Below are positions 2,022 to 58,112 of a DNA stretch of 64,000 nucleotides, in pieces. Position 1 is the first letter of the stretch; each line of letters starts with the position of its first letter. The DNA comes from Saccostrea echinata. Taxonomy: Eukaryota. The stretch covers positions 13,020,001-13,084,000 of the forward strand of contig NW_026889796.1 in assembly GCF_033153115.1 (NCBI RefSeq), given 5' to 3'. The notes below the pieces were generated by a model that was given only the letters and a program-made list of their open reading frames with translations, made no database searches and was not told where the DNA came from. The translations under genes were made by a program, and so were the position numbers.

Positions 2022-5000
2022 TCACACATTATCACTAGGTTTGTACACATTTTGCATCTCTTCATTGTGATTGCATGTACACGTACGCGAAACTTTAGGA
2101 TGACAAAGTGTATAATACATTATCATGAACAGAGTACATAGCACAACCCCTGATGAAGCCACAGATATTGTGGCTATATATACCCAGCTAGACTTATCTA
2201 CGTCACCCCAAAATACAAACAGCGCCACCATAACAGCGTTTTCTACATGGAACAAAGAGTAATATGCTATGGCAAGCACTCGAGATTTGTCTCGACTCAA
2301 ATTCATGAAGGATATGATTTGCACAAAGCCGATGAACACAATGAATAAAATGTTGTGTAATGTTCTTTTATAAGCCTTGACATTTTTGAAAAATGCAACA
2401 GTTATCATAACCATCCAATGGAATAGAACACCAAATATTACGTAGTACGGACCGTTTCCTTCGATTGATATCAACATCACAATGGCTGTAATTCTCGGTC
2501 CGATCTCGAACACTCGCCAAAGGAAGTATCCTACAGCTCCACAGTATGTGTTTGCTTTCAAACCGGAAGTTGCGTTAAAGATACGCAGTGCTCTGTTGTA
2601 TCCCGTCACAGACCATGCCAGACCTGCTAAAGACGATGCTATGGTAACAGCTCGCAGAATTTCTGTAATTAAACAAAATTTGATTAATTTAAATAATCTC
2701 TAAGTTTTTATGAAATCAGTCTTGCTTCAATAGATATTAAAGAACACCTTTTTAATCATACATGTCTATCAAAATAAATTTCGAGTTTTTGATAATAATT
2801 TTATAAATATTATTAAATATTCTTTCAAATTCGAACTTACATGATAACTATGATAGATGCATGTATAATGAAAGACCCTTTAAAGCTACATTGAAGGAAA
2901 TGATATATAATCTTGTTAAGACACTGTCACGATTCCTGGAAAATTATTCCTATTCAACTTTAAAGAAAATTACGAATTTAAGATTCCAGGGGGGTGGGGG
3001 TGGGAGATACCTATACACTTCAAAACACCTAGATTTCAGTCCTATTAAATGTAAAAGTATGAAAAAAATATTTTGCTAGAGTTGATATTTTCAGTTTGTA
3101 TTTAAAAACACATTAAGAGTATTTTTTTAAGTTTTCACGCATTAAAGTATTCAAAAACAGATCTAGAACTTTTAGATTTTATTAAAATAGTTGGATGCAA
3201 CAAGTGTAGTACATTTTATGTAGAAATAAAAAAAAACCCAGCAAAATATTACTTATGAACAGCCGATAACTGCTGTTTGACAATGATTTCAAAAGACAAC
3301 ACAACATTTTGCTGGAGACTATAAAATATATAGTGTTGTCAAATCGGACGATTTTTAGTAACCGGTTACTCGCTTACTTTTCCGATCGAGTAACCGGTTA
3401 CTCGGGTGGTTTTTCTTTAGGCCTCAAACATCCTTTTTCGCGGTGTATATACTGAATGGTAACTGAAATACATTTTATATATGTAACATCGTTACCATTT
3501 CTATATAAATCATCATTTGTATATACCGGTATATATAAAACACAAATGCACTGCTTATGAACTTTATTCTTAACAAGCATTCTGAGAGTATTGCATTAGC
3601 AATACTAGTCCCCTACCGGCAAGTGTAATCTGGTTCCCGTTAAAAATTGAAAATGCCATAATTCCATCAAAAATCAATGAAGCGGAACGAAATGTATACT
3701 TAAACTATAACTCATCAAGGTAAAGTCACATACCAAAAATTAGCTCAATATCTGCAAGCGTTTAGAAAAAAAGTGCGGAAAACCAAGTGGGACAGACAGA
3801 CAGACAGCTAGACAGACAGACGGACGGACAGTCTCAGAGGAAACCTATAGTCCCCTCCGGTTTCACCGGTAGGGGACTAATAACAAACCCACAGTATTAA
3901 ATACTAGTATCTTCTGAATAATATTTCCTCGAACACCCCGTAATAGTTTGCTGTTTTGCGGGATGTCGTTTATATAATATATCGCTTGTTTCAGAGTTAA
4001 TTTTCAATTTTAGGTGGTTTAGCATATTCGGTGTCCGACCCGTGCATGTTAATTCCCAAAATATGTTACACCTTACGGATTTAAATTCAATCATTTTTAA
4101 AAATTATTTTGATGCATATGGCGGCGTCCTCTTTAATCTTGTACTGCGGACTAGCTCAGATTTGTGTGGAGTAATTATAATGAACTCAAGCCTTCAAAAC
4201 TTGTATACCCCTTGGCAATGAAAGCCGCCTATTAGATAAACTGTGAAATACTTATCAAAACACATTGTTCATATTTGTAAAACGCTAGGTCTATAGTCTA
4301 TTGTTAAATGACAGTAAATAAAATAAGGAAAATTAAAAACAAAATTACACTTTTCCCTGCTGATTTAAACATGTTAAAATGTAAAAATTTATATATCCGA
4401 GTAACCGAGTAGCAGTTTTACTAACCGATACTCGCATCGTTCGACGGTTAACCGGTTAACCGGGTACTCGTTGACAACACTAAAAATATACAAATAACGG
4501 AAAGAGAATAGATATATATCCCTGGAGTTGTTGGTATACTAGTACATGTAGCCATCTACCTATTCCCCGTTCCATCATAAAATTGACCAATTTTAATAAA
4601 ATTTCAGCTTTGTTCATTCTTTGATGGATCAGTTGATTTCGAAAAATTAATATTTATAATTGAAGGAGAAATACACGCTCTGGCACAAATAAACATTTTT
4701 TCCCCTTTACTTACGTAAGTGTAATTCTTCTTGCGGCGTGTCATGGATAGCAATGTAAACCTGGATGATCAGCTGAGGAGCGGATTCAAAAAAGGCGTCG
4801 AACATCCGTAGAAAACTGGCATCTATATCATTCTTTATCATTCTATTGTAATGTTTCTTTTTATCAGTGGATCTGCGACTTAAGAATCCATGTTTTAAGT
4901 AAGAGAAGTTTCTGAAAAAAGAACACAGTGCTTTAATCGTATCGAATTTGGATAAGATGAGACAAGGACTGCGTAAAGAATAATTGCGAATGAATAACGT

Positions 5001-5746
5001 ATCTAGATCCTAGTATCTTTGAATTTCACCTATAACAGTGTATATATACTTTAGAAGTAAAACATTTTAAAGTCACTGACTAAAGTTCTTGAATGTGAGT
5101 TATTTAAGGGTCTCCCTGTGATCCAAAATGGCACTGATTTTAAAGCTGCGATACACTACCTGATAATGGTAGAAAATGGGAAGGCCACAACAAGAAACAA
5201 AAACTTTCCAACTTTTCCTACAGGTCCACTTCCGTCTTGTAAGTACCAAACCGTGCTTAAGGACCCTGCCACCAGAAATGACGCAACCACAACCGATGAC
5301 GTGAGTGCACACTCTACCATTCTACCGTGATTTTTGTATTCCATAGCTAGAAGAATGTCCGTTACAACGTCAAAGACAAAGAGTACTATTGAAACAACGA
5401 CACCAAGAAAGTCCAAAATGGTAAATGGATAGATTTGGATATTGTTTTTATCATCTATGGCAGTGTTATCACCCGAGTTATCAATAAGTGTGATGTTTTC
5501 ATCTCGGAGCCCCACCATATTTCTCAGCATAATTTCTCTCCTACTTTGATCACTCTCTCCATTTTCTCTCGATTTCTCGCCGACATCGACACAATCTACA
5601 GGGTCCACAGCCGGATAACTTTTATGTTGTCCGATTAGGTTGTCCTTCTCACCTTGATTCATTTGTTTTGCACGAAATCCAACCATATTGTCTACTTCAT
5701 CCTTGTTCCCTGTTTCTTGTTTCTTTTTTGATTTTAACTCCTTCAT
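2022..5746 (-). CDS. XKR: XK-related protein (XKR/CED-8 family scramblase-like), copy A1, apparently intact, 474 aa; exons 5746-5160, 4911-4715, 2662-2022
   Basis: Hand-spliced at GT-AG sites (phases 2 and 1); exon lengths 587+197+641=1425 nt, open throughout. XK-family motifs FDVVTDILLA, FESAPQLIIQVY, FEIGPR, HVENA and YYTLCHP. N-tail contains DEVD-N and DPVD-CVD. Orthology to a numbered XKR cannot be assigned. Confidence 0.9.
3331..4482. mobile_element. Non-autonomous hAT element in A1 intron 2
   Basis: TIR TAGTGTTGTCAA/TTGACAACACTA with 8-bp TSD AAAATATA. The paralogous site in A2 (about 18945-18965) is empty. Confidence 0.85.
3572..3883 (+). mobile_element. Helentron/HINE-type element nested in the hAT element
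   Basis: Subterminal inverted repeat TAGTCCCCTACCGG / CCGGTAGGGGACTA, (GACA)n microsatellite and 3' hairpin. Confidence 0.7.
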
Positions 5747-6495: not shown

Positions 6496-6870
6496 TTTTA
6501 TAAGCCCCCGTATCGAAGATTCGGGGGTATATAGTTTTTGCCCTGTCCGTCCATCTGTCTGTTTCTCCGCAAAAACTTTAACCTTGCCCATAACATTTGA
6601 TTGCTTGGAGCTATGACTTTTATATTTCACATGTGTATTCCTTGTTTCAAGACCTTTCTTTGGGTACCATCATATTTGACCTTTTACCTTCACCACAACT
6701 TTTGAACAGTTGGAGCTAGGGCTTTCAAATTCCACAGGTATATTCCTCGAGACAAGACCTTTCTTTGGGTGCCAACATTTTTGATCTCTTGACCTGGAGT
6801 TTGACTTGCATTTGAGAAACTTTAACCTTCGTCATACGGGAACATCAGTGTTTCACAAACACATCTTGTT
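6496..6870. mobile_element. Helentron/HINE-type insertion between A1 and B1
   Basis: Hairpin cccccg..cggggg, TGTCCGTC microsatellite, catcttgtt end, inserted in a T-run. Absent from the paralogous spacer near 35115. Confidence 0.65.
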
Positions 6871-8262
6871 TTTTCAAATATACCAGCAATATATCTAATA
6901 AATTTATATTCATATAGATGACTTGAGTAAAGTTTGTCAGAGTAAGTATGGAAATTTTGTAGGATTTTGTAATAAATTAATGTCATAAAATGTGACCAAA
7001 ATTTTGTGTAGATTTATATAGAAAATGGTATAAAGTCGCATATTTAAATACCAAAGAAAAGATACGATTTCTTCATATTTTAGAAATTACTATTTTAATT
7101 ATGTCATTTCTATTCAAAATAAGTAAAATAATTACATAATTATATCAATCCTTTTTTTTTCTTAGCTATTCATAATTGAAAATATACAGAATTCTAAACA
7201 AAATACACTGTTATAGGTTTAAAGAACTTCCAAGCGACTGAGTGATGACAATTTAATATAAGCTGGTTATAATAACAATCATGTATATCATTGCTATGAA
7301 AAGATTCGCAATGCCAAACGCATTTCTTGAATCCTATTAATTCTATGAATTATGAGCTGAGTATTTGTTAAGAAGATTCAAATCTACTATTAGCACATTT
7401 ATATTGATAACATGGGGAAGTATAACAGGAAATGCCCTAGTCCTGAAAAGTACAGTAGTCCTCAGTTCACCGATACATGTTCGTATTTACACTGCCTTTG
7501 AACTGATGCACTGCTACGCTTGCTCTGCTAATTCTACGTCTCCATTGCCACTTCTGCATGAACGTGCTACTTTGGGGTGACAAAGTGTGTAGTACATCAG
7601 CATGAACAGAGTACATAAAACGATTCCAGATGAGGCCACTGATACTGTGGCTAAATATACAAAACTGGACTTATCTACGTCACCCCAAAATACGAACAGC
7701 GCCACTATCACAGCGTTTTCCACGTGGAACAAAGAGTAGTATGCTATGGCAAGAACTCGAGATTTTCCTAGGCTCAAATTCATAAAAGATACAATTTGCA
7801 CAAATCCGATGAACACAATGAATAAAATGTTGTGTAGCTTTCTTCTATAAACTCTCACATTTTTGAAAAAAGCAACAGTTATCATGATCATCCAATGGAA
7901 TAGAACACCAAAAATTATGTAGTACGGACCGTTTCCTTCGATTGAAATCAACATCACAATGGCTGTGATTCTTGGTCCGATCTCGAACACTCGCCAGAGG
8001 AAGTATCCCACAGCTCCACATTTCGTATTGGCTGCCAAACCGGAAGTTGCATTAAAGACACGGAGTGCTCTGTTGTATCCCGTAATCGACCAAGCCACGC
8101 CCGCTAAAGAGGATGCTATGGTGATAGAGCGCAGTATTTCTGTAATATGGAAACTATTTTATTTTATTCAAGTTTCTGATTTAAGTCAACTGACACATAA
8201 AATTAATAGGAATACTCTCTTTTGCATATGAATGACAGGAGAAAACAATTTCAACAAAATAC

Positions 8263-9229
8263 TAGGGATGTCGACGAATAGTCGACTTTTCGACTATCAG
8301 TCGAATGGACCGACGATCGAATAATGAAACGACATTCGAATATTATCATAATTAAATAAATGCAATAAAAGAGTGATAACGTGATGGAATTCTCATCACA
8401 AAATTGAGAAACCGTCTTTCCTCAGAGACAGTCGATAAGAAAATTTTCCTCAACAAAAAACGGTTGATTTTCCATGTACGTATAGAAAGTACAGTAATTA
8501 TAAGTGCTTCACTACTGTCGCGTACTGCGGGAATTATTTATCAGTAACTGCCTGTGTTGTTTTTGTAATTAATTACCCATCAATTTACTAGGCTTTGTTT
8601 GTAAAATTATAAATTGGACTGGATCTTATACCATGTACCAATTATTTTTTGTTATTTTAAGATTGCTCAAGCGCAAGGAAGAACCATAACTGTGACATGT
8701 TTTGACACTTCGATAATTATCAAAACAATTCGCTTACATTTTAAACTGTATAAGGACATTTTGATAGCCAGAGCAAACAATAATCGAATAAGCAGTATCT
8801 AACTGTTTAACAATTTCACAGGCACTTGACATGTGGATAGTTTGAGATTAACCCCCCTCCCTCAATGTATTTCATAATAATCTTTAAAAAATATCTCCTG
8901 GCAATTTTTTTTCTTTGCTTACTTAAATAAAACCTGGCTGCATGTACAAACCCAATTATTAATTCTATTGACGGGGAAATCATACATTTTGGAAAATTAG
9001 GTTTTGAAATTCAAATAATCATGCTCTCCACGCGTTACGTTGCATAAATTTTGATGTTACTTTTTAAATAGATTTAAGTAAAAGGGTTTCTGAATTATAA
9101 ATAAATCATGTACCAGTGAAGTTTCAAATACAATTTTATTTTCAGGAAATGTTCCGAATATATTCGACTATTGTTCGAACAATGCAATCGAATAATCGAC
9201 GAAGGAAAATAAATATTTTGACATCCCTA
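8263..9229. mobile_element. Non-autonomous hAT element in B1 intron 2
   Basis: TIR TAGGGATGTC/GACATCCCTA with 8-bp TSD CAAAATAC. Absent at the B2 paralogous site (about 36460-36475). Confidence 0.85.
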
Positions 9230-9370
9230 CAAAATACATATCATAATACAGATGTCTCCAGAATAGTTTGAGCATAAAAAAATTCGCGGGTTGAAAGTTA
9301 ACCACTGCCATATTCCTTTCGGTAGCAAACCACTCAAAATGCCAATCTGCAAAACATATAACTGTAATAA

Positions 9371-10470
9371 AATCTAGAGGAACTGTGAGCACTGAGCTCA
9401 CACAATTATACCTCCGCCTCCCATATATTTAAAATGGCAAAGTCCATGTTTTTCAACGAGAGACACGAAATGAGTATCCGATCAAAAAGTAAAATAGGAG
9501 GTCACAACGGCACTATGTAACAAAGATTATGTGAAAGTATCATTAAATTAGGAGGAGTTGCGGATAAGAGATGGGTTCCTCTCAAAATCATTAAAACATA
9601 GGTAAGGCAAATTTCATATCATATTCTTTTTTTAGTTAGTGTACATCCCAAGATCAATATCCATGCAAGTTTGGTTTATGTACGACTTATAGTACTTGGA
9701 AATAGACCTGATCAAAAAACGTTTATCCTGTTTACTTATCAAGAAAATTTTGGTCAGTTCCAACATCCAAAGTGTGTCTGGAAGTTTTTATCCTTAGATG
9801 CACCATCTATGCAAGTTTAATCATAACAGGCCATAATGTTATATATATAGCTACTCCAAAAAAACTATCCTGGTCACTCCTCAGGAAAATGTAGGTCAGA
9901 TTCAGAATCCAAAGCAAGTCTGGAAGTGACCAATCCTAGCTACATCATCCATGGTAATTTGGTTAAAATATGGCTTAAATTCAATCATGTGGAAAAATCT
10001 AGGTCGAATCCAGCATGCGAAGCAGGTTGGTTAGCATACATCCCTAGATGCATCATCCATGCAAGTTTGGTCAAGGTAAGGCTTATAGTTACTTGGGAAT
10101 GGACATGCTCCAAAAACTTTCACATGGTCACCCATCTGGAAAATCTAGATGAGATCCAGCACCCGAAGCATGTGTGGTAGTGTCCATCCCTAGATGCATC
10201 ATCCATGGGCTTATATTACTTGGGAATGGACTTGCTCTTAAAACTTTAACCGGGACGCCGACGCTAACGCCGACGCCGGGGGTATAGCATAAGCTCATCT
10301 CGACTTCGTCGAGGTGAGCTAAAAACGGCATTGTCTATGTTTTGCTATTGGAAACTCGAAATATGCGTCCGATCAAAAAGTAAAATAGGAGGTGCACAAT
10401 GGCACTATGTAACAAAGGACGTTCAGACAGACGGACGGACGACTAGACTTTTCAAGCGGGGGGTATAACA
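9371..10470 (+). mobile_element. Nested Helentron/HINE-like elements in B1 intron 2
   Basis: Internal degenerate tandem units; GACGCC repeats followed by the hairpin agctca..ctcgac/gtcgag..tgagct (to about 10325); (GACG/GACA)n near 10425. Absent in B2. Boundaries approximate. Confidence 0.55.
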
Positions 10471-12967
10471 ATGTGCGTAGTAAGAATTTTTTGAAATGGG
10501 AAAAATTGCAAAGACATTAGAGAGAGAATCAACTGGAAGCATTACACACACTGAATATTAGTGTCGGGTAAACATTGGAGAAGTAAATCCATATTTAATA
10601 CAGAGATTAAAGTGGTGTTCTAAATTTTTCATTCCAAAGAAAGTAAAATCAAGAAATCTTCGGAAATCAAACCCTAGTATAAATCATCACTCTGATAGGA
10701 TCTATTTATGAACCGGGCCGAAATTTTAAATTTTCCTCTAAAAGTAATTGTAAGTCCACAGAAAAAAGTTTTTAAAAAAATAACTATTCTGAGATATTTT
10801 CAACTTATTCGTATTAACTATTAAGTCAGTTTAGCTACTATATATAGTTCAACGTTAACTGACGTTTTTCTTACCTAAATACAAAGTTTCTTAAGGCGGG
10901 GTGTGGATCGTAATGTAAATCTGGATAATTAGTTGTGGAGCGGATTCAACAAAGGCATCAAACATACTTAATAAGCAGGCATCCGATCTGTCCTTTATCA
11001 TTCTGTTGTAGTGCTTCTGTTTATCAGTAGACTTACGACTTAGATAGCCATGTCTGATGTACGAGACTTTTCTGAAAGAAATTGGAACATAATTTATTTG
11101 ATTTTCAGTTTGACAAGAAGAAAATGACCAAACAAGAGGTTCACGGTTACAATACTCGCATAATTCACCTTTAATTCTCTCTTTTTGAAAAATAAATAAA
11201 CGAAATGTATACAGTATATAAATGGAACCTCTAAATGTCGCTTCCAAGTTAATATTCCGTGATTTTATAAAATAAATTTTGGAAACAACTTTTTAGAGGT
11301 TTTATTTAAATATACATTATGTATCTACCTGAAAATATTCATGTTTCAAGGAAATTAAAATGACAGTCCAACTATGGACAAAAAGTATCCCAGATGAGTT
11401 TTACAAGTTACGTAAAACAAGAAGAGGGTATTTTTGATGATAGCATCCAAGTACAGTTTTGGGATTACAGGCATCTGGATATTTCAATATGTTTACCTAA
11501 GAATCGTAGCAAATGTAAATGCTACTATGATGAAGAGAGTCTTCGTTATTCTTCCTTTAGGTCCACTTCCGTCTTGTACATACCAAATCGAACTCAGTGT
11601 TCCCGCCACCAGAAATGACGCAACCACCACTGATGACGTAAGTGCACACTCCACAGTTCTACCATGATCCTTATATTCCAGAGCAAGTAGAATGTCGGTG
11701 ATAACGTCAACTGCAAATACTGTTATAGAAACTGTAGCACCAAGAAAGTCCAAAACGGTAAATGGATAAAGTTGAATGTCGTTTTTGTCACCTTCAGCAG
11801 TGTCTTTCTTATCAATGATTAGGGTGGCTTTTTCATCTCTGTTCCCCACCATACTTCCCAGCATTCTCCTCGGCGCCTTATAATCTTTAAATTGATCACT
11901 CTGCCCATTCTGTGTCGTTGTTCCGCCAGAATCGACACAGTCCTCAGTTTCGTTGTTCTCATCAGGATCCTTTTGTTTTCCACGAAAACCAACCATATTG
12001 TCCACTTCATTTTCCTCCGTCTCAAATGTCTTCTTCTTTGACGTCTTCATTTTTGATTTTTAGTTGAAAATATTATTTTATCCCTCCTGCTTAATTTTTT
12101 AAAACAAAAGTGGAAATTTCGAGAGTATACTTCTGTTTTCAATTCTTTTACTGAACCTGAACTAGTCAAAGGCGCTTTCATATGCTTGCATCTATTTATA
12201 GGCTAAAGTACATCAACTTTTTAAACTGTTAAAAACTCTCAGATGAGTGTACATAACGTATAAGCACAGTATATGTAATGTATATATGTTTTAACATACT
12301 CGAGCACATTCAATTATACCCAAATTAACGTTATGTGGGCTTACACTGTAAACCTATAGGGTTTAGAACGAACATTTCATTTGAACAGTTAAAACTTTGA
12401 ATATGTATTTATATCATAATTATTTTAGTTATTAATACTGAACTGATCAGTGACAGTAAAATAAAATCAAATTTGTTAAACCAGGATGTAAATTAATGGT
12501 GTACCAAATACAATGACTGGAAAAATAAAGAGTATTAACTCTACTATCAATTAAAACATTTTTGTGACGTCATTCTTTTGTTTCTACAGTCTATAATATA
12601 ATAATAATAATGTCCTTTATTTATACAGGATAGCACAATTAGTTTGGAGAACTAGTTTACATTGTGGTCCTGAAAACGTTTATAACAGACAGAAAGAGTA
12701 TGTACAGAAACAAATAAATATTATAGAATATGAAAAAAAGCGTGGTCTAATAAAAATAATATTTACACATGATATAATGTAAAACTCAAGTCTCATATTT
12801 CAAAGCATTTACTGGTCTAGTACAATATTATTTTCAGGAGTACAGTATTATATCTAATATTGTACTCCAAAATAATACTGGACTGTGTGAAAAGGTTGAC
12901 GCACCTAGCTTTTAGACAACGAATGAATAAGGCCACAAAGAGACAAAAAATACATGTATTTATATTA

Positions 12968-16866: not shown

Positions 16867-17637
16867 TACCCCCAATAATTTTGCAGATATATATCTGCAA
16901 ATCAATACTATAGAAAACATTGTTACTTTATGCTTGTGCCCTCTCAGTAATAACGTCTGATGACCTTTTTTAGCTAACCTGTCCGTCCTCCGTCTGTCTA
17001 GCTGCCTGTTCGTCCGTCTGTAAACTTCTCTCATTTTCGACTTCTTGTTTGAAGGGGATTCAAATTTCTTCAAATGAAGGACCAAGCTCTTTTCCAAGGG
17101 GAGATAATTAAGAATTAGTAAAAAATTGGTTGCATTCTTTTCAAAATCTTCTTTTGAATTCAATTTATTCTCTCAAAAACCATGTAAATGGTACATCAGG
17201 TACATAAACATATAAAAACATAAATACATATAATATAGTTGGTCAGGCAAAAGGTGAGATTAATTGAGCTAGCTAAGGAGAACAGACAATTCTATTCATT
17301 TAAGTATTAAATGTACATAATTTTTCAAAGATTTAACATATCTTTTTGACACATGACTTCACAAAACTTTATGGCGATGGCAAACACACTTTTTGAATCC
17401 TTTTATCTGTGAATTATGCATGAGATGAGTATTTGTTAAGAAGATTCGAATCAACCAATAGCACATTTCTGTTGATACATGTAGCATTGGGAATTAATGC
17501 ATAAAAATGTTAAGTATTACAGGAAATGCCCTAGTCCTGAAAAGTCCCCAGTACAGTAGTCCTCGGTTCACTGATACATGTTCGTATTTACACCGCCTTA
17601 GCTGTGAACTGATGCACAACTACGTTTGTTCTGTTAT

Positions 17638-20179
17638 TTATACGTCTCCATTGCCATTTCTGCATGAACGTGCTACTTTAGGGTGACAAAGTGTGTAGTA
17701 CATCAGCATGAATAGAGTGCATAAAACGATTCCAGATGATCCTGTGGCTAAATATACCAAACTAGACTTATCTACGTCACCCCAAAATAAGAACAGCGCC
17801 ACTATCACAGCGTTTTCTACATGGAACAAAGAGTAATACGCTATGGCAAGAACTCGAGATTTACCTCGGTTCAAATTCATGAAAGATACAATTTGCACAA
17901 ATCCGATGAACACAAGGAATAAAATGTTGTGTAGCTTTCTTCTATAAACTTTCACATTTTTGAAAAAAGCAACAGTTATCATGATCATCCAATGGAATAT
18001 AACACCAAATATTACGTAGTAGGGACCGTTTCCTTCGATTTAAATCACCATCATAATGGCTGTGATTCTTGGTCCGATCTCGAACACTCGCCAGAGGAAG
18101 TATCCCACAGCTCCACAGTTTGTGTTTGCTTTCAAACCGGAAGTTGCGTTAAAGATACGCAGTGCTCTGTTGTATCCCGTCACCGACCATGGCACACCTG
18201 CTAAAGACGATGCTATGGTAACAGCTCGCAGAATTTCTGTAATTAAACAAAATGTAGTCAATTAAATCATCTCTAAGTTATTATGAAATCAGTCTTGATT
18301 CAATAGATATAAACGAACATCTTTTTAATCATACATGTCTATTGATTCAATAGATATAAACGAACATCTTTTTAATCATACATGTCTATAAAAATAAATT
18401 TACATTTTTAAATTTTGATAATAATTATATAAATATTAAATATTCTTTGAAATTCAAACTTACATGATAACTATGATATATAGATGCATGTATCATGAAA
18501 GACCCTTTAAAGCTACATTGAAGAAAATGATATATAATCTTAAGAAACTGTCACAATTCCTGAAAAATTATTCCTATTCAACAAGAAAATTGCGAATTCA
18601 AGATTCCGGGGGAAAATACCAAGAAAATACTATTAATGCGTTTTTTCATACAAACCGAAAATACTCACTCTAGCAAAATATTTTTTTAATACTTTTTACA
18701 TTTAATGGGACTGAAATGTAAGTGTTTTGAAGCACTTAATCAATGCTTCAAAACACTTGCATTTCAGTATCTAGAACTTTTAGTTTTTATTAAAATAGTT
18801 GGATGCAACAAGTGTAGTACATATTGTATAGACTGATTTTATGAAGAAATGAAAAACAAATAGCAAATTATAACTTATGAACAGCTGATAATTGCTGTTT
18901 GACAGTGATTTGAAAAAGACCTACATGACATTTTGCTGGAAACTATAAAATATATAAATAACGGAAAGAGAATAGGTCTATATCCCTGGAGTTTTAATAC
19001 ACTAGTAGCCATCTACCCATTCCCCGTCCCATGATACAATAGACCAATTTTAATAAAAATTGGATTGTTCATTCTTTGATGGATCAGTTGATTTTGAAAA
19101 TATTTATAATTTGATAGAGAAATACGCACTCTGACACAAATAAACATGTTTTCCCCTTTACTTACGTAAGTGTAATGCTTCTTGCGGCGTGTCATGGATA
19201 GCAATGTAAACCTGGATGATCAACTGTTGAGCGGATTCAAAGAAGGCGTCGAACATCCGTAGAAAACTGCCATCTTTATCATTCTTTATCATTCTATTGT
19301 GATGTTTCTTTTAACACTGGATCTGCGACTTAACCACCCATGTTTTAAGTAAAAGAAATTTCTGAAAAAGGAACACAGTGCTTATATCAAGTTTGGATAA
19401 GATGTTTAAGGAATAATTGCGAATGAATAAAGTAGATCCAAGTATTTTTGAATTTTATCTAACTCTATATACTTTAGAAGTACAATATATTAAAAATCAG
19501 CGACTTAAGTTATTTGAGGGTCTTGCATGTGATCCAAAATGGTAGTGAAGTTATCAAGTATCTGATTTCAAAGCTGCGATACACTAACTGATAATGGTAG
19601 AAAATGGGAAGGCCACAATCAGAAACAAATACTTTCCCAATTTTCCTACGGGTCCACTTCCGTCTTGCAAGTACCAAACCGTGCTTATATAAGGACCCCA
19701 CCACCAGAAATGACGCAATCACAACCGTTGACGTAAGTGCACACTCTACCGTGATTTTTGGATTCCAAGGCAAGAAGAATGTCCGTTACAACGTCGAAGA
19801 CAAAGAGTACTATTGAAACAACAACACCAAGAAAGTCCAAAATGGAAAATGGATAGGGTTGGACGTTGTTTTTATCATTTGTGGTAGAAGTGTTCTCATC
19901 CGAGTCATCAATGATAAGCGTGGCGTTTTAATCTCGGACCCCCACCATACTTCTGAGCATAATTTTTCTCCTACTTTGATCAATTTCTCCATTTAGCTCT
20001 CGATTTCTCCCCGACATCGACACAATCTAAAGGGTACACAGCCGGTAACTTTTATGTTGTCCGATTACGTTGTTCTTCTCACCTTGATTTTGTTTTTCAC
20101 GAAAACCAACCATATTATCTACCTCACACTCGTCCGTTTCTGTTCTGTGTTTCTTCTTTTTTAATTTCAACTTCTTCAT
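17638..20179 (-). pseudogene. XKR: XK-related pseudogene A2 (A/B chimera); exon remnants 20179-19588, 19361-19166, 18236-17638
   Basis: Relative to A1: a -1 frameshift near 20045, an 8-bp deletion near 19750, a 4-bp insertion near 19690, intron-1 donor GT changed to TT at 19587, a 196-nt exon 2 (-1), and further frame disruption in exon 3 near 18000-18050. Confidence 0.9.
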
Positions 20180-33318: not shown

Positions 33319-33906
33319 TAAAGAACAAGGTACAGTTTCAATACAAATCTTGCCCTGTGTTTTTCTTAAAAATGAAAGTGATATAAAAAATTAAAACTTG
33401 TGCTTTTTGAATCATTGAAATTCCATGCAGAAAGATCATACAAACCATTTTTCTCACATGTCCTTCTAAATTCTAATTGTGACGTCAGAGACCTGTGCAT
33501 TTTCCCGTATTTTCTTGAAAAGTTGCAGAAGACACCAATTTTCAATGGAACTTTCTTTCAGAAAATATTGTCCACAGGCATCGCCCACAAAGATTTTGAG
33601 ATATATGATTTTTCAAAGGATTTTACACAGCATATCCGAAAATTAAAGTGGGCGACAGCTGTTGACACTATTTTCTTAAGGAAAATAACCCTAGAAATGG
33701 GCCATTTTGAGGCTTTTTCTGTTTAAAATAGAGAAATGCATCAAATTAATGACGTCATATTTCCAGAATGGTACTCCTTCATACCATATTCCTTTCAGAT
33801 TTATCATAGTCATATACTCAACTAACATTTAAGCCAGTTTCAAAACTTTTTGAAAACATTGATTTTTTAGGGCACAATAAAGCTAAAAACCGTACCTTCT
33901 TCTTTA
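33319..33906. mobile_element. MITE in A3 intron 1
   Basis: 20-bp TIR TAAAGAA(C/G)AAGGTAC(A/G)GTTT. Absent from A1 and A2 intron 1. Confidence 0.75.
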
Positions 33907-35720
33907 TCAAGTATCTGATTTCAAATGCTGTGATACATACCTGATAATGGTAGAAAATGGGAAGGCCACGACAAGAAACAAATACTGTCTCACTCTGCCT
34001 ATGGGTCCTCTTTCGTCTTGCAGGTACCAAATCGTGCTTAAGGACCCCGTCACCAGAAATGACGCAATCACAACCGATGACGTAAGTGCACACTCTACCA
34101 TTCTACCGTGATTTTTGTATTCCAAGGCTAGAAGAATGTCCGTGACAACATCAAAGACAAAGAGAAGTATTGAAACAACAACACTAAGAAAGTCCAAAAT
34201 GGTAAATGGATAGGGTTGGACGTTGTTTTTATCATTTGTGATAGAAGTGTTCTCATCGACACAATCTACGGAGTCCACGGTTTCATTCATTTCATCTCCA
34301 CGTGAACCAACCGGATTATCTGCCACATCCTTGTTCTTCTCTGTTTCGGGTTTTTCATCTTCATTTTTTAATTTTAACTCCGGCATTGTGTCACAATTTG
34401 TCAAAAATTAAGATTTAGTTTTGGGAAAAGAATTTATATCATGTTATTTTTTATCTAGTTTCGGTTTAGACTTATTTCCTACTGTAATCTAATATCAGTT
34501 GTTTAAGATTTGGGAAACCTATAAAGAGATTTGTATACCTAGAATTGTATTATCTGAACCGCCCCCACTGTATTCAATGTTGACAACGTCTTAATTGAGA
34601 TTTCGTGTGGTTTGCGGTAGATTTTTAAATACAGACATTCTCATCTGGAAACATGCCGGTATATTAGATATATCAATAATTATTGATTTCACACTTCATA
34701 TATTTAGTGCAATGTATCTGTAGGTTTTAAAAACTTTGATCTTGCCTAGCTTATTTATTTATATAGGACCAGAATAATTTTGTTCTTTCAGTGGCAACTG
34801 CGCTGCTTGCACAACTACATTTGGTGTTTATTTTGATTGTGAAGTTTCATTTAAATTGCCTGAGCTATCCTCGAGAACTCCTGCAAACAAAATTAGGTTG
34901 AACAATAATAATTATGTCCTCCGACCTCGTTCGGGATGACGTGATAAGAAAATGTTCAAAAGAGTTTTTTTTTTTTTCCAGATAACTTAAATGCCTTTAA
35001 ATAATCGTATCCTTGTACATAGAGACATTGTAAAGGTTTACTTTTGATTGGTTATTTAAATTATAATTATAATTCTTTCCACAGAAATATGGTACAATTA
35101 AGGATAAATAACACAATTTTTTTTTAAAGAAATTAGCACTATATCTTTTAAATTTATATTCATATAAAATTTTGTAGATTATTGTTTTAAATTAAAGTCA
35201 TAAAATATGAGCAAAATTTGGTATAGATTTATATAGAAAATGGTACAAAGTTGCATACATGTAGTATTTAAATACCAAAGAAAAGATACGATTTATTCAT
35301 GTTTTAGAAATTACTATTTTAATTATGTCATTTCCATTCAAAATAAGTAAATTAATTACCTAAAAGTATATATCAATCCTTTTTTTCTTAGCTATTCTTA
35401 ATGGAAAATATACCGAATTTAAACGATATACACTGTAATAGATTTGAAGAACTTCCAAACGACTGAGTGACGACAATTTAATATAAGCTCGTACATGTAC
35501 TTGATAATTCAATGCTTTTAATTCTATGAATTACGAGCTGAGTATTTGTTAAAAAGATTCAAATCAACCATTATCACACTTCTGTTGATAGCATTGGGTT
35601 ATAATGCATAAAATGTTAAGTATTACAGGAAATGCCCTAGTCCTGAAAAGTCCCCAGTACAGTAGTCCTCGGATCACCGATACATGTTTGTATTTACACC
35701 GCCTTTGAACTCATGCACAA

Positions 35721-38700
35721 CTACGCTTGCTCTGCTAATTCTACGTCTCCCTTGCCACTTCTGCATGAACCTACTACTTTAGGATGACAAAGTGTGTAGT
35801 ACATCAGCATGAATAGAGTACAGAAAACGATTCCAGATGAGGCCACTGATATTGTAGCTAAATATGCCAAACTGGACGTATCTACGTCACCCCAAAATAC
35901 GAACAGCGCCACTATCACGGCATTTTCCACGTGGAACAAAGAGTAGTACGCTATGGCAAGAACTCGGGATTTGCCTTGGCTCAAATTCATGAAAGATACA
36001 ATTTGCACAAATCCAATGAACACAATAAATAAAATGTTGTGTAGCTTTCTTCTATAAACTCTCAAATTTTTGAAAAAAGCAACAGTTATCATGATCATCC
36101 AATGGAATAGAACACCAAAAATAATGTAGTAGGGACCGTTTCCTTCGATTGATATCAACATCACAATGGCTGTGATTCTTGGCCCGATCTCGAACACTCG
36201 CCAGAGAAAGTATCCCACAGCTCCACATTTCGTATTGGCTGCCAAACCGGAAGTTGCATTTAAGACACGGAGTGCTCTGTTGTATCCCGTAATCGACCAA
36301 GCCACGCCCGCTAAAGAGGATGCTATGGTGATGGAGCGCAGTATTTCTGTAATATGGAAACTGTTTTATTTTATTCAAGTTTCTGATTCAACTCATCTGA
36401 CACATAAAATTAATAAGAATACGCTCTCTTGCATATGAATGACTGAAGAAAGCAATTTCAACAGAACACATATCATAAAACAGGAGTCTCCAGAATAGTT
36501 TGAGCTTAAACAAAATTCGAGAGTTGAAAAAGACATTTGCAAAAAAAAAAAACCCAATCATAGTTAACCACTGGCATATACCTTTCGGTAGCAAACCAGT
36601 CAAAATGCCAATTTGTTAAACATTTAATTGTAATAAAAATAATGTACGTAGAAAGAATTTCTTGAAAGGGGAAAGGTTACACAGACATCAGGGGCAGAGA
36701 ATTGAGAGAATCAACTGGAAGAATTTTCACCCACAAAGTATTAGTGTCGAGTAAATATTGGAAAGGTAAATCCATATTTATTAAAGAAATTAAAGTGTTG
36801 TTCTGAATTTTTCATTCCCAAGAAAGTAAAATCAAGAAATCTTCGGAAACCACACCCTATAAATCATCACCCTGACAGGATCTATTTAAGAACGTTTAAA
36901 GTTTAAATTTTCTTCATTGAAGGTCAAGGATGCAGCTTGAGCTAAAAGTAATTATAAGTCCACAGAAAAAAGTTAAAAGAACGCGACTTTCATAAAATTC
37001 ACGTTTATAATGAAACCTCTGCATACATGTTTATAATGTAGCTTTTTTGTATAGAGATCTATCTATTTAAGTTGACTTGGTGGTAATTATTGAGATCACA
37101 GGGTACTGTAAACCAACTTTTATTCGCGTGCGAGAAATATTCACGAGTTTCGCGAGCTACCCTAACTATATATCGACTATAAATCGCCGCAAACCAATTA
37201 ATTTACTTTGTAGATAATGTTTCCTGAGTCGCGAAAATTAATTGTCGCGGATTGATTTCAAACTGACGATTCGCGAATAAAAGATGACGCGAATAATAGT
37301 TGGTTTACAGTAATTGGTCAGTTTGTTTAGTGTAAATTCCTGTTTAAACACCGCATCGTTACCCTGACTGTCCTGTAATTTTTCAATGATATCATAATTA
37401 AATAAATCACCGTTGAGCATTGTGAATTGGTACATGTATATGTCTATGTTTTGCAGTTATGTATCAAATTATATTATTAGACAAACATTGTAAATTAAGT
37501 GAAAGTTCCGTCTTAGTTTTGATTATGGTAACAATGCATTGTGGACTTGTGTGACATCTGCTCTGGAAAATTATCAATGTCTGATTTCTCAGGCATGTTT
37601 CATGGGTTTTCTTAATTTTTTTCTTGTCTATAAAACATGTAGTTTCCAGATAAAGGTAACAGAATGTTTCTATCTTCTTAAGGACATATGCAATGTACCT
37701 AACCTACTGATAATTTTTCAAGATATTCTAAATTTAAGATTATAATGTCATCAGATGTTCGTAGACAAAAAATCAGCATGCATTACCAAGGATTTTGAAA
37801 GATATCAACTGATGAAAATTCTTGAATGATTCAAAGAAAAATATATTAAAATTACTAAACATATATTCTAGATTTTTTTTTAACCCAAAACTTGTTTTAG
37901 AAGATGTGTACAACACCTATGGTGGCATATTTCTGCCATGTGTGCAAGTTATTTTTCTGTTAGATATGTCGACATGCAAGATAAATATGATGACATGCAA
38001 GATAGTTATGTCAACATGCAACATAACTATGTTGACATGCAAGAAAATTGCAATCAAATAAGAATTATAAAAAATCTTTTAAAAATCTCAAATATTGCCC
38101 ATATGTGACTTCCAATATGCAAGATGCTACTTATTTATGTCGACATGCAAATTATTTATGTTGACATGCGAAATAAATATGTTGGCATGCAACTTATTTA
38201 TGTCAACATGCAACTTACGTATGTTAACATGCAACTTATTTATGTCAATATGCAACTTATTTATGTCAACATGCAACTTAGTTATGTCAACATGCAATTT
38301 GTTTATGTCAACATGCAACTTAGTTATGTTGACATGCGAGATAAATATGTTGACATGAAACTTAGTTATGTTGAGTAGCATATATAAATATAATTTTTAA
38401 AAAGTAAATATCCAAAAATGAAATCACAAATCGATGTAAATGTCTGAAGACCCAGGAATGACGAAAAAGTTTACAGTGAATATGATCGATTTGTGATTTC
38501 ATATTGGATATAAACTTTTTTTTTTAGATATGATCGATTTTCAAAATGATAAAATTTGGAATTAAATGATTAAATTTAAATGCAAAAGAAATTATGTGAT
38601 ACACAATTTGAACATTTGTGCGAACGTGCAGATTCGTACGGTAAAATTGAAGTTGATTTAATGATCGAAAATTTATTCAAGCAAATGTTGCATTTAAATT

Positions 38701-39386
38701 ATTTTCTATAATATTAGGTGGACAACAAAGTAGAAATTGAATTTCCTTAGATAAAATGTCCCGGCGATTCAGAAACGTGACCGTAGATTATGAAACGTTT
38801 TTTATGGTGGCATATTTCTGCCCCATGTGTGCAAGTTATTTTTCTGTCAAATATGTTGACATGCAAGATAAATATGTTAACATGCAAGATAGTTATGTTG
38901 ACATGCAAGATAGTTATGTTGACATGCAGGAAAATTGCAATCAAATAAGAATGATAAAAAATCTTTAAAAAATCTCAAATATTGCCCACATGTGACTTCC
39001 AATATGCTAGATGCTACTTTTTTATGTCGACATGCAAGTTATTTATGTTGACATGCGAAATAAATATGTTGGCATGCAAGTTATTTATGTCAACATGCAA
39101 CTTAGGTATGTTAACATGCTACTCATTTATGTCAACATGCAACTTAGTTATATCAACATGCAACTTAGTTATGTCAACATGCAATTTGTTTATGTCAACA
39201 TGCTACTTAGTTATGTTGACATGCAACTTAGTTATGTTGAGTAGCGGATATATATATAATTTTAAAAACGTAAATATCGAAAAATGAAATCACAAATCAA
39301 ATCACAAATAAATGTCTGAAGACCCAGGAATGGCGAAAAAGTTTACAGTGAATATGATCGATTTGTGATTTCATTTTGGATACATA

Positions 39387-39424
<38 letters not shown>

Positions 39425-55298: not shown

Positions 55299-58112
55299 TT
55301 AACAAATGGCTGTATTGGGGTGACACAGCTTATAAAATGATATAATAAAAACTAAATTGAACATAAGGCCACCAGAAACAATGCCAATTGACCCGTAATA
55401 AATCCAAGGACAAAAGGAAATATTTTTAGCCAAAATCCATAAAATAAGTATAGTGATATTCTCAGTGTAAAAGAATAAATAATATAAAAGGGCATGGTAT
55501 CGAGATTTACCGGGACTGACATTCATGAAAGAAAAAATCTGCACAAATCCAACGAATAAAATAAATATAATGTTTTCGTGGGTTTTCTTGTATGGCCTCA
55601 TTTTCGTCGCAAATGACCACGTGATAACAACAATCCAATGAAAGACTACTGTTACTGCAAAAATGATGCCGTTCATTAGAATAATCATAACTAATGCCAA
55701 TACTCTTGGTCCTATTTCAAACGCTCTCCAGAGGAAGTATCCTGTTGCAGCAAAGATCGTTTTTTGTCTCGTTTTGTGCATAGCGTTGCTCACACGGAGT
55801 GCTCGATAGTAAGCAGTCACAGACCACGTGACAGATGCCCAAGAGGAGAGAACTGTTAACAGTCTAAGGATATCTGAAAATTAACCAAAAAATGGTAAAG
55901 TGTTGCAGCGAAATATAACACAATGCTCATATGTATGTGATTTAAAAATCGTCCAATGGCTGTATATTATGTATTTAATTGCCAAACTTAAAAATCTATA
56001 TGGGTAAATTGAATTTTTACAGCTTGATATTTTTTGAATTAGTAACCAGCTTCTCAAGATGTATAGTCTACGGAAATATACAATTTTAAAGTATAGCAGA
56101 ATTTTGAGTAGCTAATCGTAAATATTGAGGAAATACACAACAGAGCTTCAGATTGCTGTGGTAAATTCATGCATGTAATCCATTACCTTGATTTATCGAT
56201 GTAAAATACATATAACTACTATGGTATCAGAAAGAAAATAACTTCTTTTAGATGCTTACTAAATGACTTCTGAAATAATTATGTTATCTTAAGATTGCAC
56301 TCAAAAATATCAATATCCGGTTCAAGACAACTCGTGGCGCTTCCATAAATTTGATAAAATCCGGAAAAAAGAAACTTACGACTGTGAATCGATATGTCTT
56401 CACAATCTTTGAGATTCTCCTGTTCCTTCAGAATGAGGTAGATCTGTAGCACCAGTTGGGGAGCGGATTCAATAAAGGCGTCAAACATTCTTAGTAGACT
56501 GGCATCTCTATCATTGTAGATCATCTCTATGTAATGATAGTGCTTGTTAATGCCTTTCTGCTTGCTTTTGCAGCCGTGAAATACGTAGGTTATATTTCTG
56601 TAAAAAACAATAATGTTACTTTTAAAGAATATAAGAAACTATATTATAATATTATAAGTAATAACATCCTTTTATGTACATGTATATAATATGTGACCCA
56701 CTTTTCCAGAAAAAATGTTAACTCAGCTCGTTTTTGATGACATTTAAAAATGATTTGTGTGACTTGAACATTCTTCATTTCATTTTTTTTTTGTATTGTT
56801 ATTTCTCTTTAATCAATAGTAGGCCTAACCAATTGCTTGTTACGCACTAATCAACAGGACTATTCATTAATATATGACTCAAAAATGTGATTATGAAGAA
56901 TATTTCATGTTAGATCTAAGGACTGTTGCACATTAACTTCATTTAAGTATGAAACACATTGACAGAATATTATCTATGAGTTGTTTGGAACTCTTACACG
57001 CTAAAGGTTATCTGGGATCACAAACCTGACCATGTCTTAATCCTTACATATCTTCGCTAGCCAAGGGTTTCTGATACGCTACTCTCCTCATAGCATATCA
57101 GAAACCCTTGGCTAGCGAAGATGCTTACGTACAGGAAAAGTGCATTAATGTCTACATGATTTAGCCATGAAATAACTTGAAATCCATTGTATCACTGTTT
57201 GTTGCATTTTTAAAAACCCGTGTATTCTTTAACATTTTTTCAGAGAAATGAGACAGGAAAGTACGACAAGAGGTGATGTAAAAGGATGGGAATAGAAGAA
57301 GATAGAAGGGGCCGAGGGAAATGTAAAGCCGGGGGAGCTAGGTTAACGTTATGAGAAAATAAAATGATTACCCCTCCCCATCCCTACTCATGTCAAATGA
57401 CATAATCAAGTCTACCTCTCTATAGTAGCAAATGGAAACATCAGAATCAATAAACAGATATTTCGGCGGGATGGTTCCTGAGTATGCCAGATCGAACTTA
57501 AGATTCCAGTTACTAAAAATGCAGCAGCTACCAGGGATGACGTCAAAACGCACTCGAACATCATTCCATCGTCGTAATAGCTTTTGGCCAACAAAATGTC
57601 CGTAAAAACATCAATGCAAAAAAATATCAGAGAAATACTGATGCCAATAAAATCGATGCAAGAAAATGGATAAAACTGATTTGTTTTCTTTTTTGATTCG
57701 TCAACACGGACACCGCCTCTGTTTGATCCACGCGCTGGCCGACCAGATTGTCGACTTCGTCTGCAGAACTCTTACTTTCGAAAGCACCTGGATTCTCGGT
57801 CGTAGAATCTCTGGTTTGTAATTCGACGTGTTGTCCATTTTTCTTTTTTGATTCGTCAACACCGACACCGACTGAAGAGTCGCCCGTCTCTAAATGATCC
57901 ACGCGCAAACCGACGAGATGGTCGACTTCGTCTGCAGAACTCGTACATAGGAAGCACCTGGATTCTCGGTCGTAGATTCTCTGGTTTGTAAATTCGACAT
58001 GTTGTCCATTCCTGATCGGTCTGAGACACACTCCTTCAACATCCACCTTACGTTGATCGGCTAATCGTCTGGTTAATATCACTTTACATTTCCGGTTCTC
58101 ATGGTTTTCCAT
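55299..58112 (-). pseudogene. XKR: XK-related protein copy C2 with an exon-1 frameshift (pseudogene, null allele or alternate haplotype of C1); exons 58112-57416, 56597-56380, 55873-55299
   Basis: Exon 1 is 697 nt (3n+1, whereas 3n+2 is required). A short deletion near 57712 in the repeat region shifts the frame before TM1. Exons 2 and 3 (218/575 nt) are open and nearly identical to C1. Confidence 0.8.
57049..57123. mobile_element. 75-bp palindromic hairpin insertion in C2 intron 1
   Basis: ATCTTCGCTAGCCAAGGGTTTCTGATA / TATCAGAAACCCTTGGCTAGCGAAGAT with CTTAC(A/G) flanks; absent in C1. Confidence 0.8.

What the first reader, a model, noticed from the sequence alone, without database searches (positions are those of the whole stretch)
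2022..58112. Expanded XKR scramblase cluster with N-terminal effector-caspase sites: candidate CED-8-style, caspase-gated 'eat-me' system
Seen: the otherwise divergent, acidic N-terminal tails carry DxxD-type motifs. A1 has DEVD-N (5701-5690) and DPVD-CVD; B2 has DEVD-N (43234-43223) and DCVD-SGG; B1 has NEVD-N and DCVD-S; A3 has DVAD-N, DSVD and DCVD; C1 has 3x DEVD plus DKVD; C2 has 2x DEVD. The block EVD(N/H)(M/L)VG is about the only N-tail sequence shared between the A/B and C subtypes. Established: DEVD is the optimal caspase-3/7 site; vertebrate Xkr8/4/9 are activated by C-terminal caspase cleavage, whereas nematode CED-8 is activated by N-terminal cleavage by CED-3. Inference: a lineage-specific family of scramblases switched on by removal of an N-terminal tail, possibly acting in apoptotic phosphatidylserine exposure or haemocyte clearance. 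I cannot verify that this is undescribed.
Basis: partly seen in the sequence, partly recalled or inferred. Interest (0 to 1): 0.85.

Follow-up and report, generated by a model that had tools for sequence, protein, structure and literature searches.

The report
Oyster XKR genes with N-terminal DEVD
A tandem array of seven oyster genes for XK-related membrane proteins, the family of the lipid scramblases that flag dying cells, of which three are intact; their floppy N-terminal tails carry a perfectly conserved caspase-type DEVD motif, so they are probably cut by caspases as the worm protein CED-8 is, but this is untested.

Summary

Only A1, B2 and C1 are intact as assembled:
- B1 has a TAA in exon 2.
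- A3 has a TAA in exon 3.
- A2 is riddled with frameshifts.
- C2 has a net 13-nt loss that puts its tail out of frame with the membrane core.

The three intact genes all read DEVD-N. Three of the four broken ones read NEVD, CEVD or DVAD.

The block D-E-V-D-N-x-V-G-x-R is invariant in 11 A/B-type proteins from Saccostrea, Ostrea, Crassostrea and Magallana, while the rest of the tail drifts. It recurs in the C clade. Pinctada and Mytilus relatives carry DEIDG or DDVDG in their N-tails.

The tail is predicted to be disordered. The core folds like XKR9, XKR4 and XKR8 and keeps the acidic residues needed for Xkr4 scrambling. There is no C-terminal DxxD.

An N-terminal, CED-8-like caspase site is the best reading (about 0.55). 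Neither cleavage nor scrambling is shown, and the conserved N-x-V-G-x-R half points to a second, non-caspase function. The motif is not specific to this species. I found no paper on mollusc XKRs. An earlier scan note (s1-805454) had already flagged the C1 repeat on this same window.

The parts
2022..5746 (-). A1, intact XK-related gene of 474 aa. Exons 5746-5160, 4911-4715 and 2662-2022. DEVD-N at 5701-5690 (residues 16-20).
   Evidence: Splice model (GT/AG sites). It is identical to the NCBI protein P0125, 'XK-related protein 6-like [Saccostrea echinata]'. Pfam hits.
7514..12050 (-). B1, disrupted copy. Exons 12050-11497, 11071-10875 and 8139-7514. In-frame TAA at 10893-10891 in exon 2. The motif reads NEVD-N (12011-12000).
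17623..20176 (-). It has several frameshifts and stops in exons 1 and 3. The motif reads CEVD-N (20128-20117).
30565..34404 (-). A3, disrupted copy. Exons 34404-33941, 33091-32892 and 31175-30565. In-frame TAA at 31134-31132 in exon 3. The motif reads DVAD-N (34329-34318).
35721..43273 (-). B2, intact gene of 458 aa. Exons 43273-42720, 41256-41060 and 36346-35721. DEVD-N at 43234-43223 (residues 14-18).
   Evidence: The model is identical to the NCBI protein P0124.
47435..50194 (-). C1, intact three-exon model of 573 aa. Exons 50194-49266, 48511-48294 and 48009-47435. The 224-aa N-tail carries DKVD-H and three DEVD-N. A 225-bp in-frame duplication lies at 49572-49991.
   Evidence: Exon 1 equals the database ORF P0001.
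55299..58112 (-). C2, disrupted as assembled. Exons 58112-57416, 56597-56380 and 55873-55299. Relative to C1 it lacks 70 + 168 nt and gains 6 nt, so it lacks the 225-bp duplicate and a further net 13 nt, with the breaks near 57692-57716. The ATG and DEVD tail are therefore out of frame with the membrane core.
51395..51537 (.). Assembly gap in the intergenic stretch between C1 and C2. It is not part of any exon.

Best explanation
This is a birth-and-death tandem array of XK-related genes in the oyster Saccostrea echinata. Three are intact (A1, B2, C1) and four are decaying.

Each intact protein has an XKR4/8/9-like ten-helix membrane core. It keeps the TM1 and TM3 acidic residues needed for scrambling in Xkr4. 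In front of the core lies a disordered, acidic N-terminal tail of about 95-225 residues.

The tail carries a composite short motif, D-E-V-D then N-x-V-G-x-R. A/B-type tails also carry a second D-x-V-D-(G/S/C) and an Asp-less N-x-V-G-x-R-D-E copy.

Inferred mechanism: during apoptosis an effector (DEVDase) caspase cuts after the P1 Asp. This removes a 17-19-residue lysine-rich N-peptide in A1 and B2. In C-type proteins it removes a longer segment that holds a conserved basic stretch (R-K-x-K-V-I-L-T-R-R-L-A). The cut changes the activity, location or partners of the scramblase, by analogy with CED-3 cutting CED-8 after residue 21.

Shown here: gene structures, family and fold, motif conservation, predicted disorder, and absence of a C-terminal site. 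Inferred: cleavage, its effect, scrambling, and any role in phosphatidylserine exposure.
For: Family and fold:
- PF09815 hits.
- phmmer against PDB sequences: XKR4 6e-25, XKR9 5e-18, XKR8 1e-17, XK only 2e-3.
- AlphaFold2 core at pTM 0.71. Foldseek target-normalised TM-score 0.80-0.83 to rXKR9, 0.85 to hXKR4 and 0.73 to hXKR8.
- D126, D130 and E238 align with Xkr4 D123, D127 and E310 (PMC10495444).

Motif conservation:
- D16, E17, V18, D19, G23 and R25 are 100% conserved, and N20 and V22 90%, in 11 A/B-type proteins of four oyster genera. Mean conservation is 0.92 for the block, 0.49 for the rest of the tail and 0.71 for TM1-2.
- Motif codons differ synonymously between paralogues: GTA/GTG/GTC, GAT/GAC, GGA/GGT/GGC.
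- C-clade proteins keep DEVD, DDVD, DELD or DETD followed by N-x-(V/F)-G-x-R.
- The variation spares P4, P3 and P1 and falls on P2, as DExD specificity allows.
- The A/B and C clades each contain Saccostrea, Ostrea and Crassostrea members, so the motif predates their split.
- Pinctada has DEIDG and DDVDG; Mytilus has DDVDG.
- In 38 more distant XKR N-tails, DxxD occurs 58 times against 28 in shuffles, and D[DE]xD 15 times against 4.1.

Other support:
- Intact copies read DEVD; three of four broken copies have degenerate P4-P2.
- N-tails have pLDDT below 50.
- All DxxD of A1 lie in the tail, and no intact gene has one after the last helix.
- Precedent and enzyme: CED-8 is cut N-terminally, on an intracellular terminus (PMC12334663). 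C. gigas caspase-3 and caspase-1 cleave DEVD-pNA (PMC3923871). The genome holds many Peptidase_C14 loci.
Against: - There are no cleavage, expression or scrambling data for any of these proteins.
- P1' to P6' (N-x-V-G-x-R) are as conserved as P4-P1, which a caspase does not require.
- The same block recurs about 55 residues downstream without an Asp.
- Some paralogues keep (N)-x-V-G after losing DEVD: two S. cucullata proteins, P0013 and P0127, and P0014.
- Full-length CED-8 and hXkr4 scramble in liposomes without cleavage (PMC12334663), so 'cleavage switches it on' is not secure even for the models.
- AlphaFold2 shows no docking of the tail on the core.
- The contrast between intact and broken copies rests on only seven copies.
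Confidence: 0.55

Rival explanations
1. The conserved block is a docking or sorting motif whose core is (N)-M/L-V-G-x-R. It would bind a partner, a lipid-transfer protein or a trafficking adaptor. The acidic DEVD in front of it would be part of that motif rather than a protease site.
For: - N-x-V-G-x-R is conserved as strongly as DEVD. It occurs twice per A/B tail, the second time without an Asp.
- S. cucullata P0127 has three M-V-G-x-R copies and no DEVD. P0013 and P0014 keep N-L-V-G without DEVD.
- Other XKR members work through partners: XK with VPS13A, Xkr8 with basigin, Xkr4 with an XRCC4 fragment (PMC12334663).
Against: - All four residues of the optimal caspase-3/7 tetrapeptide are invariant in the A/B clade. 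Variation elsewhere follows DExD rules.
- DExD persists without the V-G-x-R half in Pinctada, Mytilus, an O. edulis second site and C1's middle copy.
- DxxD is enriched in N-tails of distant XKRs.
- The two readings are not exclusive: cleavage could unmask or detach the docking motif.
Confidence: 0.25
2. The site is a true caspase site, but cleavage shuts the protein down or times its destruction. Cutting exposes an N-terminal Asn, a destabilising residue in the Arg/N-degron pathway (from general knowledge). The cut protein would then be short-lived rather than activated.
For: - P1' is Asn in almost every homologue. The exceptions are Ser in the M. gigas A/B protein and His in the first site of C1 and C2.
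- That conservation is not needed for caspase recognition.
- Full-length CED-8 and hXkr4 are already active in vitro (PMC12334663).
Against: - This is purely inferential; nothing was tested here.
- The known XKR precedents link cleavage to phosphatidylserine exposure in cells (PMC12334663, PMC10113483).
- Pinctada and Mytilus have Gly at P1'.
Confidence: 0.12
3. The DxxD motifs are chance products of acidic, low-complexity tails and have no function.
For: - The tails are 11-14% Asp and about 10% Glu.
- Generic D..D counts in single tails are not significant on their own (P of 0.05-0.1).
- C1's three DEVD come from one recent duplication.
Against: - The block is positionally invariant across four genera and two old paralogous clades, with synonymous codon changes, while its flanks diverge.
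- Exact DEVD is expected in under 1% of shuffled tails.
Confidence: 0.03

Closest known systems
C. elegans CED-8 (XK-related; cut by the caspase CED-3)
   Same: - It is an XKR-family membrane protein.
- Its caspase site lies in the N-terminal intracellular tail. The processed form lacks residues 1-21 (PMC12334663). DEVD ends at residue 16-21 in the A/B-type oyster proteins.
   Different: - Orthology was not tested, because no tool gave me the CED-8 sequence.
- The oyster motif is a longer composite (DEVD plus N-x-V-G-x-R) with further D-x-V-D and Asp-less copies.
- C-type proteins would lose about 75-195 residues, not 21.
- The genes sit in a tandem array with pseudogenes.
- Cleavage is unproven.
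Vertebrate Xkr8 and Xkr9
   Same: - Same fold: Foldseek target-normalised TM-score 0.73-0.83.
- Same family: E of 1e-17 to 5e-18.
- They are caspase-regulated scramblases that expose phosphatidylserine.
   Different: - Their caspase site and inhibitory helix are C-terminal (PMC12334663, PMC10938166).
- The oyster proteins have short C-termini of 5-24 residues after C-H-P, without DxxD.
- No basigin-type partner was examined.
Vertebrate Xkr4 (and the Xkr4/6/7 group; NCBI names the oyster proteins 'XK-related protein 6-like' or '9-like')
   Same: - It is the best sequence match among solved structures (6e-25) and the best fold match (0.85).
- The residues aligned with D123, D127 and E310 are conserved (PMC10495444).
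   Different: - Xkr4 is cut far from the membrane in a long C-terminal tail and needs an XRCC4 fragment in cells (PMC12334663, PMC10495444).
- The oyster tails are N-terminal.
XK (XKR1), the VPS13A partner
   Same: It belongs to the same Pfam family.
   Different: - The match is only marginal (E of 2e-3).
- XK lacks a caspase site (PMC12334663).

Membership tests
XK-related protein family (Pfam PF09815) | Profile match above the curated cut-off | tested here: met
   Exons 1, 2 and 3 score 30-111 bits against a cut-off of 24.8. The genome scan agrees.
XK-related protein family (Pfam PF09815) | XKR membrane fold | tested here: met
   The AlphaFold2 core is mostly above pLDDT 70 with pTM 0.71. 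Foldseek target-normalised TM-score is 0.80-0.85 to rXKR9 and hXKR4 and 0.73 to hXKR8. The next hit has E of 0.08.
XKR scramblases (Xkr4/8/9 type) | TM1 and TM3 acidic residues needed for scrambling (mXkr4 D123, D127, E310) | tested here: met
   D126, D130 and E238 of A1 align with them. These columns are invariant or nearly so in 23 relatives. PMC10495444.
XKR scramblases (Xkr4/8/9 type) | Phospholipid scrambling activity | not testable with these tools
   Needs a cell or liposome assay.
C-terminally caspase-gated XKR (Xkr4/8/9) | Caspase recognition site in the C-terminal cytosolic tail | tested here: not met
   There is no DxxD after the last helix in A1, B2 or C1. The tails after C-H-P are 24, 19 and 5 residues.
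N-terminally caspase-gated XKR (CED-8 type) | Caspase-type tetrapeptide in the N-terminal intracellular tail | tested here: met
   DEVD lies at residues 16-19 (A1) and 14-17 (B2) and occurs three times in C1. It is conserved across genera. This is a sequence-level test only.
N-terminally caspase-gated XKR (CED-8 type) | Site lies in an accessible, unstructured segment | tested here: met
   pLDDT is below 50 for residues 1-104 of A1 and 1-91 of the S. cucullata C-type protein. This is a prediction, not a measurement.
N-terminally caspase-gated XKR (CED-8 type) | Cleavage by an effector caspase, and a gain of phosphatidylserine exposure on truncation | not testable with these tools
   Needs a bench test. 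Oyster DEVDase activity exists (PMC3923871).
N-terminally caspase-gated XKR (CED-8 type) | Orthology to CED-8 | not tested
   No tool gave a CED-8 or human XKR sequence by reference, so no joint tree was built.

The most novel reading that the evidence does not exclude
N-terminal caspase gating is not a nematode oddity. It would be the usual mode for a large protostome XKR clade (bivalves at least, perhaps myriapods), built on a two-part module:
- a DExD cut site;
- fused to it, an N-x-V-G-x-R element that is unmasked as a new N-terminus, acting as a degron, plug or partner-docking site.

Copy number of the module (one to three or more per tail, by in-frame duplication) would tune sensitivity to caspase.
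Probability: 0.25. Interest if true: 0.65.

Novelty: new member of a known kind. Interest (0 to 1): 0.45.

Why it matters
If the site is cut, oysters would give the first lophotrochozoan example of a caspase-gated XKR scramblase. It would also show that the N-terminal (CED-8) layout, rather than the vertebrate C-terminal one, is widespread in protostomes.

The finding names concrete candidates (A1, B2, C1 and their orthologues in farmed Crassostrea and Ostrea) for the unknown machinery of phosphatidylserine exposure in bivalve haemocyte apoptosis. That process is studied in oyster disease and stress.

The invariant residues after the cut site pose a sharper question than the DEVD itself: what does the new N-terminus do?

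The value is that of a well-supported, testable prediction. It is not a new kind of system.

Tried and rejected

Tail acting as a plug on the core:
- AlphaFold2 leaves the whole tail below pLDDT 50, both for A1 and for a C-type orthologue.
- That gives no support for a plug, and it is not evidence against one.

Readings rejected:
- All seven copies functional.
- Chance origin of the motifs.
- A gap-related artefact; the gap is intergenic.

Literature:
- Three searches found no paper that holds Xkr together with oyster, bivalve or mollusc terms.
- The CED-8 cleavage paper (PMC3939056) and the 2014 JBC paper by Suzuki and colleagues (PMC4215210) are not held. The CED-8 site is therefore cited only through PMC12334663.

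Steps not done:
None of those sequences could be obtained by reference. Comparison with solved structures stands in for it.
- Any search or fold with a joined (spliced) model. Exons were searched by reference. The joined frames were built only inside a local script, to test that they stay open. The A1 and B2 models proved identical to database proteins P0125 and P0124, and those were used for searching and folding. The joined C1 model was neither searched nor folded.


Full report
**What is in the window**

The window is C47:13020001-13084000 of a 923-Mb animal genome. Two database proteins are named 'XK-related protein 6-like [Saccostrea echinata]'. They lie on a contig of exactly the length of C47 (17,055,740 bp) and are identical to my spliced models of B2 and A1. 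The organism is therefore the oyster Saccostrea echinata.

Six-frame ORFs, Pfam and tblastn with oyster full-length proteins show seven XK-related (PF09815) loci. All lie on the minus strand and each has three exons:
- Exon 1 encodes the N-tail plus TM1-2.
- Exon 2 encodes the E-S-A-P-Q-L region.
- Exon 3 encodes the C-terminal half.

From high to low coordinate the order is:
- C2
- the assembly gap
- C1
- B2
- A3
- an intronless receptor-like ORF
- a small exon-3 remnant
- A2
- B1
- A1

Two more divergent exon-1-like pieces lie just left of the window.

**The assembly gap**

The gap at 51395-51537 lies 1.2 kb upstream of the C1 start codon and 3.8 kb downstream of the C2 stop. Nothing XKR-like lies between 50300 and 55200. 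No reading frame of this finding crosses it. I did not try to fill it.

**Which copies are intact**

I searched all GT/AG combinations for open three-exon frames. This gave models only for A1 (474 aa), B2 (458 aa) and C1 (573 aa). The other four are disrupted as assembled:
- B1 has an in-frame TAA at 10893-10891, five codons before the exon-2 donor.
- A3 has a TAA at 31134-31132 inside a membrane helix of exon 3.
- A2 has several frameshifts and stops.
- C2 differs from C1 by +6, -70 and -168 nt. It lacks C1's 225-bp duplicate and a further net 13 nt, which puts the start codon and tail out of frame with the membrane core.

The array is therefore a birth-and-death cluster, not seven working genes.

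**The motifs**

The state of the first site tracks the state of the gene:
- Intact copies: A1, B2 and C1 read D-E-V-D-N.
- Broken copies: B1 reads NEVD, A2 reads CEVD and A3 reads DVAD.
- C2, whose lesion looks recent, still reads DEVD.

The sample is small, but this is the direction expected for a constrained site.

C1's three DEVD come from one 225-bp in-frame duplication (97% matches). This agrees with the earlier scan note s1-805454.

**Chance or conservation**

Shuffling each tail gives an exact DEVD in under 1% of trials. The stronger argument is comparative.

A profile of the five exon-1 translations, run against 1.84 billion representative proteins, found only 70 relatives. The named ones come from:
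- Ostrea edulis
- Saccostrea cucullata
- Pinctada imbricata
- Mytilus galloprovincialis
- Mizuhopecten
- Physella
- the centipede Strigamia

A further search added Crassostrea virginica and Magallana gigas proteins and spliced transcript-like ORFs.

In 11 A/B-type sequences from four genera:
- D16, E17, V18, D19, G23 and R25 are invariant, and N20 and V22 are 90% conserved.
- Mean conservation is 0.92 for the block, 0.49 for the rest of the tail and 0.71 for TM1-2.
- Codons of the block differ synonymously between paralogues.

Two further islands exist in the A/B tails: L-D-x-V-D-(G/S/C) about 30 residues downstream, and N-x-V-G-x-R-D-E with no preceding Asp.

In C-type proteins:
- A basic N-terminal stretch (R-K-x-K-V-I-L-T-R-R-L-A) is conserved.
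- The site is S-(S/A)-D-E-V-D-N-L-V-G-x-R, with DDVD, DELD and DETD variants.
- Several C-type paralogues have lost the site: P0013, P0014, P0133 and P0011.

An exon-3 tree puts Saccostrea, Ostrea and Crassostrea/Magallana members in both the A/B clade (support 99/99) and the C clade (100/99). Pinctada lies outside both. The A1-A3 and B1-B2 copies form a Saccostrea-specific expansion. The motif therefore predates the radiation of these oyster genera.

Further out:
- Pinctada has DEIDG and DDVDG, and Mytilus has DDVDG.
- Strigamia has L-E-V-D-N-I-I-S-F-R just before TM1.
- In 38 distant XKR N-tails, DxxD and D[DE]xD are enriched 2-fold and 3.7-fold over shuffles. None of 5,000 shuffles reached either observed count.

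**What the proteins are**

- A1 matches solved XKR4 (6e-25), XKR9 (5e-18) and XKR8 (1e-17), but XK only marginally.
- The AlphaFold2 model has a confident core (pTM 0.71). It superposes on rXKR9, hXKR4 and hXKR8 with target-normalised TM-scores of 0.73-0.85, and nothing else comes close.
- D126, D130 and E238 align with the three acidic residues that are essential for scrambling in mouse Xkr4 (PMC10495444).
- The N-tails of A1 and of a C-type orthologue are predicted to be disordered.
- No intact gene has a DxxD after the last helix. In A1 all three DxxD of the protein lie in the tail.

**Mechanism**

Vertebrate Xkr4, Xkr8 and Xkr9 are cut by caspase-3 in a C-terminal intracellular tail. CED-8 is cut by CED-3 N-terminally, and the processed form lacks residues 1-21 (PMC12334663). 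In A/B-type oyster proteins DEVD ends at residue 16-21. Oyster effector caspases have DEVDase activity (PMC3923871), and the genome has many caspase loci.

I therefore take an N-terminal effector-caspase site as the best reading (about 0.55). In A1 and B2 the cut would remove a lysine-rich 17-19-residue peptide. In C-type proteins it would remove a longer segment that carries the conserved basic stretch.

What the cut does is inference:
- Activation by analogy with CED-8 is the simplest guess.
- However, purified full-length CED-8 and hXkr4 scramble without cleavage (PMC12334663).
- AlphaFold2 gives no sign that the tail docks on the core.

**What does not fit a plain caspase site**

The six residues after the Asp are as conserved as DEVD. 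They recur without an Asp, and they survive in paralogues that lost DEVD. Conversely, DExD survives without them in Pinctada, Mytilus and some second sites. These look like two separable modules placed side by side.

The second module could be a docking element or, through the near-invariant P1' Asn, an N-degron. Both are speculation. The N-degron rule is from general knowledge and was not tested here.

**Novelty**

The genes are annotated automatically as XKR6-like or XKR9-like. Three full-text searches found no paper that treats XKR proteins in molluscs. The kind of system (a caspase-gated XKR with an N-terminal site) is already known from CED-8, so I file this as a new member of a known kind. 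It carries a testable twist, the composite motif. Interest is moderate.

**Limits**

- There is no tree with CED-8 or the human XKRs.
- Joined exon models were never sent to a search or folding tool. Exons were searched by reference, and the natural database proteins P0124, P0125 and P0009 were used where a full-length protein was needed. The joined C1 model was left out of all searches.

Noticed in passing
window 25782-26738 (-): An intronless 318-aa ORF with a seven-helix look sits inside the XKR array. It has no Pfam hit even at E of 5. Its language-model neighbours are rhodopsin-family 7TM receptor clusters (score 0.97). This is a lead only.
   Followed up: partly
window 21853-22093 (-): Weak exon-3-like XKR fragments (E of about 1e-4 to 1e-5) lie between A2 and the receptor-like ORF. 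They are probably the remnant of an eighth copy.
   Followed up: no
L033 9343-9633 and L031 8058-8390 (C47:13019343-13019633 and C47:13008058-13008390, minus strand): Two more divergent XKR exon-1-like pieces lie just left of the window. The nearer one has a short N-tail without DxxD. No matching exon 3 was found nearby.
   Followed up: partly
L017 (G000:C9:2710518-2710787, +): An unlinked XKR paralogue of the same genome also has DEVD in the ORF upstream of TM1 (H-D-E-V-D-D).
   Followed up: no
Proteins P0019, P0026, P0039, P0041, P0053, P0061, P0067: A separate, unnamed XKR subfamily carries a conserved D-x-V-D-M-(A/P/S)-(V/I) block in its N-tail, upstream of TM1. P0067 has three copies. The source organisms are unknown.
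   Followed up: no
P0127 (S. cucullata, 606 aa): An A/B-type paralogue with a doubled tail. It has three M-V-G-x-R or I-V-G-x-R copies but no DEVD, and a C-terminal S-I-S-S-D-R-D-G repeat.
   Followed up: no
window 38982-40543 (both strands), inside intron 2 of B2: ORFs made of short repeated peptide units indicate satellite-like repeats within the 4.7-kb intron.
   Followed up: no
window 53461-54435: Two adjacent tandem arrays of 146-bp and 149-bp units (76-79% matches) lie between the gap and C2.
   Followed up: no
O. edulis proteins P0071 and P0115: The A/B-type and C-type genes of Ostrea edulis have consecutive RefSeq accessions on the same 75.6-Mb chromosome. The pairing of A/B with C therefore looks syntenic across oysters.
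   Followed up: no
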